A stretch of DNA of 63,787 nt, counting the filler, from Octopus bimaculoides (taxonomy: Eukaryota): assembly GCF_001194135.2 (NCBI RefSeq). It is 9 parts of 9 records of this genome, joined end to end, with 100 filler letters (N's around TTAATTAATTAA, not from the genome) between each part and the next. Parts side by side here need not be neighbours in the genome. Positions count along the whole stretch, not along the records: positions 49,526 to 51,406 come from NW_026432627.1; 8 more parts are not named here. The stretch is one strand, 5' to 3'. The position numbers and the translations under genes are program-made. Position 1 is the first letter of the stretch. Each line of letters begins with the position of its first letter. A model generated the notes under the pieces. That model was not told the origin of the DNA. It saw only the letters and a program-made list of their open reading frames with translations, and did no database searches. Of this stretch, positions 50,843 to 51,406 are shown one piece after another.

Positions 50843-51406
50843 TTAACATTGACAATAACATTAAATATAACATGAGAAGTGAAGGATATTTCGAATTTTT
50901 TGGTGTATTCTTATCGATTTGAACAAGATACAAGATGTTTGATAAAAATATTGTCATTGCTAGAGAAACTTTCTCCCCTGACTCAGGAGGCAGAAGAAAA
51001 ACAAAAACAGTTAAAATAGTCATCATTACTGTCGGAATCAACATAGCTATGATTCCTACGGTGAGTTTACGTCGTAACTGCATTACCACTAATGCATAAC
51101 TGCATTCTTCGACTTTGCCATTTGCCTCACCAGAGAAATGAATATCCCACTTGTAGTTTTCTGCCAAATGCATATTCCTGTAATAGATTGTTTTTAATCG
51201 TGTTTCGTATGGATAATGTAAAGCAACACACATGTATATTTTACATTTCTGGTCATCAAATGGATACGTATAAGCGTTCACTTGGCAATAGGTTTCTATG
51301 TACTTAAGAGACCACAACTCCACTGTTCCTTTATAGTGAACGTATACTTCGCGATTGATATTCGAATCATCTTGCTCATTCACTGAATTACACATCATCA
51401 GAGATG
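50843..51406 (-). CDS. Partial atypical nicotinic-like Cys-loop receptor of the cephalopod chemotactile receptor (CR) family; ECD half plus M1-M3, both ends in gaps
   Basis: 187 open codons without introns. Cys-loop CQVNAYTYPFDDQKC (C-x13-C), pre-M1 LRRK, M1 AMLIPTVMMTILTVFVFLLPPES, M2 GEKVSLAMTIFLSNILYL, M3 YPSLLMLYLMLLSML. No vicinal loop C CC and no loop B Trp. Confidence 0.92.

What the first reader, a model, noticed from the sequence alone, without database searches (positions are those of the whole stretch)
50843..51406. Chemotactile-receptor-type Cys-loop channel exon, apparently isolated from a CR array
Seen: intronless open frame with Cys-loop YTYPFD, PPESGEK (-1' Glu, cation-type) and M1-M3. 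Loop B reads MCVALH instead of GSWTY, loop A reads MCNS instead of YN, and loop C has a single Cys (VEECSYA) rather than CC. Established: octopus CRs are diverged nAChR relatives that lack the ACh aromatic box, mediate taste-by-touch in suckers and are largely tandemly arrayed. Inference: a CR paralog with an unpaired-looking loop C Cys and possibly an extra CNS/CVA disulfide. No second CR is visible in 64 kb and the neighbours are GADD45 and SRRM2-like, so it is either a dispersed copy or a scaffolding misjoin (it lies between linker gaps 49470 and 51451).
Basis: partly seen in the sequence, partly recalled or inferred. Interest (0 to 1): 0.75.

Follow-up and report, generated by a model that had tools for sequence, protein, structure and literature searches.

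The report
Octopus taste-by-touch receptor gene fragment
This is the middle third of an ordinary octopus chemotactile ("taste-by-touch") receptor gene sitting on a tiny gapped scaffold; it only looks isolated because the scaffold is short, and its one mildly interesting trait is a ligand-binding region that is a patchwork of its two closest sister genes.

Summary
On the minus strand, window 50844-51404 is a 187-codon stop-free frame (chance about 5e-7). It is cut by the piece edge at the 5' end and by a 582-N gap at the 3' end.

It is a chemotactile receptor (CR), not a canonical nAChR. phmmer gives octopus CRT1 6e-77, squid CRB1 5e-21 and alpha7 nAChR 4e-14. It nests inside the octopus CR clade.

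Its nearest relatives are two Octopus bimaculoides array genes, P0159 and P0163, each 86.6% identical in protein. No identical protein turned up in the incomplete searches available.

The whole 1.88-kb piece is colinear with the P0159 locus, and the 3' flank also matches the O. vulgaris orthologous locus. "Isolated from the array" is therefore a short-scaffold artefact, not a dispersed copy.

The MCNS and CVALH cysteines are family-wide and co-vary perfectly, so they probably form a disulfide. The loop C Cys is one nucleotide from the Phe or Ser of its sisters and recurs in another octopod CR.

The coding sequence is a significant mosaic of P0159-like and P0163-like tracts, including loop C. 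This suggests gene conversion.

It is a new member of a known kind, of low to moderate interest.

The parts
50843..51406 (-). Contig B: the middle of a single-exon chemotactile receptor gene. Codons 1-187 are window 51404 down to 50844. They cover the second half of the extracellular ligand-binding domain, M1, M2 and the start of M3.
   Evidence: Stop-free translation. Pfam LBD and TM domains. CRT1 match at 6e-77, gapless over CRT1 residues 93-278. Nucleotide identity 92.9% to P0159 and 92.7% to P0163.
51390..51392 (-). Codon for C5 (MCNS). This is the loop A position that holds Tyr93 in alpha7 nAChR. It is the likely disulfide partner of C59.
   Evidence: Alpha7 alignment. Co-variation with C59: 32 sequences have both Cys, 5 have neither, none has only one.
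51243..51287 (-). Cys-loop, C40-QVNAYTYPFDDQK-C54.
   Evidence: Both cysteines and the PFD motif are invariant in all 37 aligned sequences.
51216..51230 (-). Loop B, C59-V-A-L-H63. A61 occupies the position of the ACh-binding Trp149. A61 and L62 correspond to the CRT1 pocket residues A152 and L153.
   Evidence: Pocket residues are named in bioRxiv 10.1101/2025.10.28.685082.
51091..51157 (-). P0163-like tract (coding nt 248-314) that includes loop C (GKVEECSYAL). There is 1 difference from P0163 and 14 from P0159. E100 is at the CRT1 L191 position. C101 (window 51102-51104, codon TGC) is at the CRT1 F192 position.
   Evidence: Site classes and tract counts. A run of 12 consecutive P0163-type informative sites gives a permutation P of 0.0017.
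50985..51065 (-). M1 (LTVGIIAMLIPTVMMTILTVFVFLLPP).
   Evidence: Pfam Neur_chan_memb match to residues 121-184. Nearly identical to CRT1 M1.
50916..50975 (-). M2 pore helix with the -1' Glu (E144), 2' Ser, 6' Thr and 9' Leu. All pore-facing residues are identical to CRT1.
   Evidence: Alignment to CRT1 and alpha7. The Glu of PPES, E141, is invariant in all 37 sequences. The -1' Glu E144 is present in 34 of 37; three CRs have Lys there.
50844..50888 (-). First 15 residues of M3 (YPSLLMLYLMLLSML), cut off by the N gap.
50261..50842 (.). Scaffold gap of 582 N. By colinearity it hides about 509 bp: the last 309 nt of the gene (rest of M3, a short intracellular loop, M4 and the stop) plus about 200 nt of 3' flank.
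   Evidence: Piece 1318-1881 matches L002 10856-10293 and piece 72-735 matches L002 12029-11365. The P0159 stop is at L002 11164.
49526..50260 (-). Contig A: non-coding 3' flank, colinear to its last base with the region 201-885 bp downstream of the P0159 stop codon. The proximal 326 nt (window 49935-50260) show 1 mismatch. The next 337 nt show 25 mismatches. A 51-nt insertion lies in a TG/CA-rich microsatellite at about 49547-49597.
   Evidence: The same flank matches the O. vulgaris P0162 locus at 87%. No Rfam family and no meaningful ORF.

Best explanation
The piece is a fragment of a genuine octopus chemotactile receptor (CR) gene. It carries the central 187 of roughly 390 codons plus 3' flank. 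It belongs to the young CR subclade that holds the O. bimaculoides array genes P0159 and P0163 and the O. vulgaris gene P0162.

The locus is homologous to the P0159 locus. It is one of three things:
- the P0159 ortholog in a very close relative of O. bimaculoides;
- a divergent allele of P0159;
- a very recent tandem duplicate of P0159.

**Inferred mechanism, from the family.** The full protein would assemble into a pentameric, cation-permeable ligand-gated channel in sucker sensory cells. Poorly soluble hydrophobic molecules would bind the flat, non-aromatic pocket at the subunit interface, formed by loops A, B and C. Binding would open a pore lined as in CRT1 (-1' Glu, 9' Leu).

**What is shown here.**
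- Family membership.
- Loss of the ACh aromatic box.
- The likely loop A to loop B disulfide.
- The conserved pore.
- A ligand-binding domain that differs from its sisters mostly by non-synonymous changes.
- Alternating P0159-like and P0163-like tracts, most simply explained by gene conversion between array paralogs. The loop C tract carries Glu at the CRT1 L191 position and Cys at the F192 position.

**What is inferred.** Ligand class, expression site and intactness of the unseen two thirds of the gene.
For: **Family.**
- PDB phmmer gives CRT1 6e-77, squid CRB1 5.5e-21 and alpha7 4e-14.
- Pfam finds both pLGIC domains.
- NJ tree bootstrap values: query+P0159 84%, trio 81%, with O. vulgaris P0162 87%, the surrounding 7-gene clade 99%, and the 26-sequence CR clade that includes CRT1 97%. 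A bona fide nAChR serves as outgroup.

**Locus homology.**
- Coding identity is 92.9% to L002 and 92.7% to L003.
- The 3' flank is 95.9% identical over 665 nt to L002 only, and colinear across the gap (509 bp in L002 against 582 N here) and to the last base of the piece.
- The O. vulgaris locus L006 matches the coding part at 87.2% and the flank at 87.4%.
- Synonymous divergence is 0.046 to P0159, 0.10 to P0163 and 0.15 to O. vulgaris.

**Array context of the relatives.** Nine CR genes lie in one orientation within 240 kb of O. bimaculoides CM046615.1.

**Mosaic.**
- There are 32 sites where the query matches only P0159, 31 where it matches only P0163, and 6 private sites.
- The tract at nt 248-314 has 1 difference from P0163 against 14 from P0159.
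- The run test gives P = 0.0017 (12-site window) to 0.00085 (16-site window).
- A three-nucleotide Ser14 codon switch is shared with P0163.
- In the flank, divergence jumps from 1/326 to 25/337. The same proximal flank is 12% diverged from O. vulgaris, so it is not simply conserved.

**Pocket and pore.**. CRT1 contact residues come from bioRxiv 10.1101/2025.10.28.685082. CRs are described as intronless, hydrophobic-ligand-gated nAChR derivatives in PMC11526382, PMC13174522 and PMC10338036.
Against: - Only 48% of the expected coding length is visible. The N-terminal ~98 codons (including CRT1 pocket positions Y39 and Y58), the rest of M3, the intracellular loop and M4 are unseen. An inactivating lesion cannot be excluded.
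- dN/dS against P0159 is about 1.8 on small counts (34.8 non-synonymous against 5.2 synonymous differences). That fits diversifying selection or conversion, but also relaxed constraint.
- No expression, ligand or species information is available.
- The source genome could not be identified.
- No identical protein was found in the searchable collections, but those searches were lossy.
- The query could be one of the 26 published O. bimaculoides CRs that are absent from the NCBI annotation.
Confidence: 0.85

Rival explanations
1. It is a decaying pseudogene copy of a CR. It would be a dead duplicate whose visible part happens still to be open.
For: - dN/dS against the closest relative is at or above 1.
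- The array does hold truncated copies, for example L001 9542-10534.
- Two thirds of the gene, counting the flanking parts, is unseen.
- It sits on a tiny unassembled scaffold.
Against: - 187 codons are open in 33% G+C DNA (P about 5e-7).
- Only 6-9 private nucleotide changes are present, against about 31 on each sister branch.
- All invariant family residues are kept: the Cys-loop, PFD, PPESGEK, 9' Leu and both disulfide cysteines.
- The TM part is conserved (dN 0.03).
Confidence: 0.15
2. It is an assembly chimera. A short-read assembler would have threaded reads from the two paralogs P0159 and P0163 into one false contig.
For: - The sequence is a near-even mix of P0159-only and P0163-only states (32 against 31).
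- It lies on a 564-bp contig in a gapped scaffold.
- The family is multi-copy.
Against: - Switch points are only 6-10 nt apart (for example sites 314 and 320, or 211 and 221). That is too close for a k-mer graph to cross between two sequences.
- Inside the P0159-like block at nt 43-247 the query still differs from P0159 at 14 sites.
- Nine sites match neither parent.
- The flank differs from L002 at 26 sites plus a 51-nt insertion.
Confidence: 0.05
3. It is a dispersed copy, retroposed or translocated, lying away from the CR array.
For: [quoted passage not shown]
- No second CR lies on the piece.
Against: - The piece is only 1.9 kb, while CR genes in the array are 5-60 kb apart. No neighbour could be seen in any case.
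- Homology to the P0159 locus runs to at least 885 bp past the stop codon and to the very last base of the piece. No poly(A) tract marks an end of homology.
- The same flank is shared by the O. vulgaris ortholog, and weakly (68%) by the neighbouring array gene P0164.
Confidence: 0.05
4. It is a canonical nicotinic acetylcholine receptor subunit or an AChBP-like protein, not a CR.
For: NCBI's automatic names for its closest relatives are 'acetylcholine receptor subunit beta-type acr-2-like' and '5-hydroxytryptamine receptor 3A-like'.
Against: - The E-value gap is about 60 orders of magnitude between CRT1 and any nAChR.
- Loop A Tyr is replaced by Cys, loop B Trp by Ala, and there is no vicinal Cys pair.
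- It nests in the CR clade with high support.
- It has transmembrane helices, so it is not an AChBP.
Confidence: 0.01

Closest known systems
Octopus bimaculoides CR array genes P0159 (NCBI name 'acetylcholine receptor subunit beta-type acr-2-like', 387 aa, CM046615.1 at 37,850,625) and P0163 ('5-hydroxytryptamine receptor 3A-like', 399 aa, at 37,808,365)
   Same: - Protein identity is 86.6% to each, and nucleotide identity about 93%.
- They share the same single-exon layout.
- The 3' flank is colinear with the P0159 locus.
- The loop C tract is nearly identical to P0163.
   Different: - There are 25 amino-acid differences from each.
- Private residues are Y57, HYPYE, MHLAEN and C101.
- The query keeps the ancestral A61 in loop B, where P0159 has Gly and P0163 has Pro.
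- No identical copy lies in the roughly 190 kb of the array that could be fetched.
Octopus CRT1 (chemotactile receptor for terpenes 1; PDB 8EIS, 9E6B)
   Same: - Identity is 64% over 186 gapless residues, at E 6e-77.
- It shares the Cys-loop, the MCNS and CVALH cysteines and the pocket residues W122, A152 and L153.
- M1 and M2 are nearly identical, including every pore-facing residue.
   Different: - Pocket positions differ: F124 is Leu, L191 is Glu and F192 is Cys.
- L191 is a progesterone contact under diversifying selection (bioRxiv 10.1101/2025.10.28.685082). A different ligand profile is therefore expected.
- It belongs to a different CR subclade.
Octopus vulgaris P0162 (OX597828.1, 400 aa)
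   Same: It is the orthologous locus. The coding part matches at 87.2% nt and 77% aa, and the 3' flank at 87.4%.
   Different: Its loop C is of the P0159 type (NDGISHTS). It carries an insertion of about 1 kb in the flank.
Canonical nicotinic acetylcholine receptors (e.g. alpha7, PDB 7KOO)
   Same: It shares the pentameric Cys-loop fold, the PFD Cys-loop motif, the -1' Glu and 9' Leu pore, and the M1-M3 topology.
   Different: - Identity is only about 25-30%.
- The loop A Tyr, loop B Trp and loop C Tyr-x-Cys-Cys are missing, and loop C is about 6 residues shorter.
- The gene is intronless.

Membership tests
Cephalopod chemotactile receptors (CRs) | Pentameric Cys-loop channel subunit with a Neur_chan_LBD domain followed by a Neur_chan_memb domain. 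| tested here: met
   Pfam gives 1.2e-8 and 8.4e-10, both above their cut-offs. The Cys-loop C40..C54 and M1-M3 are present. Only the central 187 residues can be seen.
Cephalopod chemotactile receptors (CRs) | Falls in the CR clade, separate from bona fide nAChRs. | tested here: met
   CRT1 6e-77 against alpha7 4e-14. NJ bootstrap is 97% for the 26-sequence CR clade that includes CRT1 and 99% for the 7-gene subclade. The tree is distance-based and covers 187 columns only.
Cephalopod chemotactile receptors (CRs) | Loss of the acetylcholine aromatic box and of the vicinal loop C cysteines. | tested here: met
   The loop A Tyr93 position is Cys5 and the loop B Trp149 position is Ala61. Loop C has no CC pair and is about 6 residues shorter. 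The complementary-face loop D Trp lies in the missing N-terminus and was not seen.
Cephalopod chemotactile receptors (CRs) | Intronless (single-exon) gene. | tested here: inconclusive
   The visible 561 nt are uninterrupted. The closest relatives are contiguous ORFs in the genome: L002 1164 nt, L003 1200 nt, L006 1203 nt and L001 1212 nt. The 5' 294 nt and 3' 309 nt of this copy are not in the piece.
Cephalopod chemotactile receptors (CRs) | Located in a tandem array of CR genes. | tested here: inconclusive
   The piece is too short to hold a neighbour. Its flank is colinear with that of the array member P0159 and of the O. vulgaris ortholog. This points to an array-type locus but does not place it.
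Cephalopod chemotactile receptors (CRs) | Cation-selective pore (-1' Glu ring, hydrophobic 9' gate). | tested here: met
   The SGEK motif has E144 at -1' and L154 at 9'. Pore-facing M2 residues are identical to CRT1. This is sequence evidence only.
Cephalopod chemotactile receptors (CRs) | Gated by poorly soluble hydrophobic molecules and insensitive to acetylcholine. | not testable with these tools
   This needs heterologous expression. The family property comes from PMC11526382 and PMC10338036.
Cephalopod chemotactile receptors (CRs) | Expressed in sucker sensory epithelium. | not testable with these tools
   No transcript identical to the fragment was found. No expression data could be queried.
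Canonical nicotinic acetylcholine receptor subunits | Conserved agonist-binding aromatic residues. Alpha subunits also carry the vicinal Cys pair in loop C. | tested here: not met
   Cys, Ala and a single Cys or Ser stand at the Tyr93, Trp149 and Cys190-Cys191 positions.

The most novel reading that the evidence does not exclude
The fragment is a divergent allele or a very young duplicate of the array gene P0159. Its ligand-binding loops would have been rewritten by short gene-conversion tracts copied from the neighbouring paralog P0163.

Octopus taste-by-touch receptors would then diversify their binding pockets by shuffling loop cassettes between array members, in an MHC-like way. The divergence profile fits this:
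- 10% in the extracellular domain;
- 2.7% in the TM part;
- 0.3% in the proximal flank;
- 7.4% in the distal flank.

I found no CR paper that reports gene conversion. The only hits for that term concern protocadherins or other receptor families.
Probability: 0.35. Interest if true: 0.5.

Novelty: new member of a known kind. Interest (0 to 1): 0.3.

Why it matters
CRs are a recently described sensory receptor family (first described in 2020, structures in 2023). In them an old neurotransmitter receptor was turned into a contact chemoreceptor. One more paralog adds little by itself.

Two things are useful to specialists:
- **A natural loop C swap.** The copy pairs a P0159-type backbone with a P0163-type loop C. 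It carries Glu and Cys at the two positions that in CRT1 are L191 (a progesterone contact) and F192. That makes it a ready-made experiment on ligand tuning.
- **A possible second diversifying mechanism.** The sharp mosaic in the coding sequence and the flank hints that gene conversion between array members contributes to pocket diversification, alongside point mutation under diversifying selection.

The case is also a caution for annotation. Array paralogs end up on tiny unplaced scaffolds, and only about half of the reported O. bimaculoides CRs appear in the NCBI protein set.

Tried and rejected
**Searches that led nowhere.**
- Single-sequence word-index search with the 187-aa fragment and a fragment-only profile both returned only P0001. 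They missed even the 86%-identical P0159 and P0163, so they say nothing about whether an identical protein exists. The full-length profile search was the one that worked.
- Exact look-up of the 187-, 185- and 184-aa forms found nothing in the collection.
The source contig and species could therefore not be identified.
- I looked for an identical copy in the O. bimaculoides array by fetching eight loci covering about 190 kb between 37.80 and 38.06 Mb of CM046615.1. None was found. Stretches at 37.862-37.879, 37.900-37.930 and 37.994-38.038 Mb, and many N gaps, remain unseen.
- The primary CR papers (PMC10228259, PMC7605239, PMC10262778, PMC11055638) are not held. Family features therefore rest on reviews and preprints.
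- Rfam finds nothing in the piece.

**Readings considered and rejected.**
- Loop C Cys as a relic of the ancestral CC pair. phmmer aligns C101 with alpha7 C190, but MAFFT aligns it with the Tyr195-equivalent position. All the closest relatives carry Phe, Ser or Ile there, so the Cys is derived.
- A uniform orthologous divergence of about 4% from P0159. The flank and coding divergence are strongly heterogeneous (Fisher P about 1e-7 and 2e-6).

**Steps not run.**
- Structure prediction. The 64% gapless identity to a solved structure makes it redundant, and the tool returns no coordinates to measure Cys-Cys distances.

Full report
**What is in the sequence.** The usable piece is window 49526-51406. 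It consists of contig A (49526-50260), a run of 582 N (50261-50842) and contig B (50843-51406). The finding's coordinates are exactly contig B. On the minus strand, window:50844-51404:- reads as 187 codons without a stop. The other five frames hold 7-19 stops. A random sequence of this composition would stay open that long with probability about 5e-7. Pfam finds the ligand-binding and transmembrane domains of neurotransmitter-gated channels above their cut-offs. The frame is cut off at both ends, by the piece edge and by the N gap. It is therefore a fragment, not a whole exon.

**Which family.** Against all solved structures the best matches are the octopus sensory receptor CRT1 (8EIS, 9E6B) at 6e-77, gapless over CRT1 residues 93-278. 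Squid CRB1 follows at 5.5e-21 and alpha7 or muscle nAChRs at about 1e-14. A full-length profile search recovered the octopod CR set. In a neighbour-joining tree of 36 relatives over the 187 shared positions, the query groups with O. bimaculoides P0159 (84% bootstrap). It then joins P0163 (81%), O. vulgaris P0162 (87%) and a 7-gene clade (99%), all inside a 97%-supported 26-sequence CR clade that contains CRT1. A true nAChR is the outgroup. Protein identities are 86.6% to P0159 and to P0163, 77% to P0162 and 64% to CRT1. It is a CR.

**Binding-site and pore features.**
- Aligned to alpha7, the loop A Tyr93 position is Cys5 and the loop B Trp149 position is Ala61. Loop C has no vicinal Cys pair and is about six residues shorter.
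- MCNS and CVALH also occur in CRT1. Across 37 aligned sequences the two cysteines are both present in 32 and both absent in 5, never one alone. There are at least two independent paired losses among CRs.
- CRT1's pocket residues are named in bioRxiv 10.1101/2025.10.28.685082. Mapped onto the query, W122, A152 and L153 are kept. F124 is Leu, L191 is Glu100 and the neighbouring F192 is Cys101.
- Cys101 has no visible partner. The fragment holds five cysteines and four are accounted for, and the N-termini of P0159 and P0163 have none.
- The Cys101 codon is TGC, one step from TTC (Phe, P0163) and from AGC (Ser, P0159). The same position is Cys in another octopod CR, P0174. It is a derived substitution, not a relic of the CC pair.
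- The pore-facing M2 residues, including the -1' Glu and 9' Leu, are identical to CRT1.

**Genomic context.**
The real context is 735 bp of AT-rich non-coding DNA downstream of the gene.
- This flank matches the region 201-885 bp past the stop codon of P0159 on O. bimaculoides chromosome CM046615.1 at 95.9%. The match is colinear across the gap (509 bp there, 582 N here) and runs to the last base of the piece. The only interruption is a 51-nt microsatellite insertion.
- The O. vulgaris P0162 locus matches both the coding part (87.2%) and the flank (87.4%).
- P0159 lies in an array of at least nine same-strand, single-exon CR genes within 240 kb, spaced 5-60 kb apart.
- A 1.9-kb scaffold could never show a second CR. 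"Isolated from the array" is an artefact of fragmentation, and a dispersed retrocopy is unlikely.
- No identical copy lies in the roughly 190 kb of the array I could fetch. Parts of the array and many N gaps remain unseen.

**The mosaic.**
- Over 561 coding nucleotides, 489 are identical in the query, P0159 and P0163. The query agrees only with P0159 at 32 sites and only with P0163 at 31. Six sites are private and 3 are three-way.
- The two kinds of site are clustered. Nt 1-42 and 248-314 are P0163-like, with 1 difference each from P0163 against 6 and 14 from P0159. Nt 43-247 and 315-561 are closer to P0159.
- A run of 12 consecutive P0163-type sites has a permutation P of 0.0017.
- With O. 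vulgaris as outgroup, 11 derived states are shared with P0163 and 6 with P0159. The shared states include a three-nucleotide serine codon switch.
- The P0159 loop C (GINSQSSHAS) resembles that of the O. vulgaris ortholog and of P0174. The query's loop C (GKVEECSYAL) is the P0163 type.
- Synonymous divergence is lowest to P0159: 0.046, against 0.10 to P0163 and 0.15 to O. vulgaris. Most differences from P0159 are non-synonymous, 34.8 against 5.2, giving dN/dS of about 1.8 on small counts.
- The flank is also heterogeneous. There is 1 mismatch in the proximal 326 nt and 25 in the next 337 (Fisher P about 1e-7). That proximal stretch is 12% diverged from O. vulgaris, so it is not simply conserved.
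- The simplest reading is a P0159-type locus that exchanged short tracts with P0163-type paralogs. A near-identical flank segment shows very recent shared ancestry with the reference P0159 locus.
- A simple assembly chimera is unlikely. Switch points lie only 6-10 nt apart, 9 coding sites match neither parent, and the P0159-like block still differs from P0159 at 14 of 205 sites.

**Source and status.** I could not identify the source genome. The fragment's exact sequence is not in the protein collection. Fragment-only searches were too lossy to be informative. The annotated O. bimaculoides CR set is incomplete: about a dozen proteins against a reported 26-member family (10.1101/2025.03.03.641191), and CRT1 itself appears only from UniRef/PDB. 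The O. bimaculoides chromosome assembly is the 2015 shotgun assembly re-scaffolded with Hi-C (PMC9068888). An unplaced shotgun scaffold of that species is therefore plausible, as is an assembly of a very close relative. The fragment may thus be an ortholog, a divergent allele or a young duplicate of P0159, and possibly one of the already catalogued CRs.

**How it most likely works.** By homology the full protein would form homo- or heteropentameric cation channels in sucker sensory cells. These would be opened by poorly soluble hydrophobic ligands bound at the loop A/B/C pocket (PMC11526382, PMC10338036, PMC13174522). Shown here are family membership, the remodelled pocket, the conserved pore and the mosaic history. 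Inferred are expression, ligand class and intactness of the unseen parts. Glu and Cys at the positions of CRT1's L191 and F192 predict a ligand profile different from CRT1's steroid and norharmane sensitivity.

**Verdict.** The "isolated copy" idea is an artefact, and the disulfide idea is right but not specific to this gene. This is a new member of a known kind, or possibly an already catalogued one. It is of low to moderate interest, with a modestly interesting hint of gene conversion shaping the ligand-binding loops.

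Noticed in passing
Alignment of 37 CR/nAChR sequences; query C5 = window 51390-51392, C59 = window 51228-51230: The loop A Cys and the loop B Cys are both present in 32 sequences and both absent in 5: P0004 L/G, P0156 G/T, P0166 S/Y, P0178 F/G and nAChR alpha10 Y/G. None has only one. 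This points to a CR-wide disulfide linking loops A and B, lost as a pair at least twice.
   Followed up: partly
Proteins P0165 (O. sinensis), P0170 (Logan) and P0176 (O. bimaculoides), M1-M2 linker: These three orthologous CRs read PPESGKKV. They carry Lys instead of the -1' Glu that sets cation selectivity in this superfamily. They may have altered permeation or work only as heteromer partners.
   Followed up: no
L001 9542-10534 (O. bimaculoides CM046615.1, about 37.94 Mb): A truncated CR copy lies 5 kb downstream of the intact 403-aa CR P0154. It is annotated as the 177-aa P0001 and lacks the N-terminal part of the ligand-binding domain. It is probably a decaying tandem duplicate.
   Followed up: no
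L004 10001-15376 (P0164 gene model): The 459-aa model carries an N-terminal extension of about 70 aa joined by a predicted intron to an otherwise single-exon CR. The extension looks like a transposase-derived fragment, so the model is probably a gene-prediction fusion.
   Followed up: no
Window 49547-49597 and 49597-49656: A TG/CA- and TACA-rich microsatellite lies here. The piece carries a 51-nt insertion relative to the O. bimaculoides P0159 flank at this spot.
   Followed up: yes
Protein search results: CRT1 appears only as a UniRef/PDB-derived entry. Only about a dozen O. bimaculoides CRs appear as annotated proteins, against the 26 reported. NCBI names them acetylcholine or 5-HT3 receptor-like. 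The family is under-annotated and misnamed in public protein sets.
   Followed up: partly
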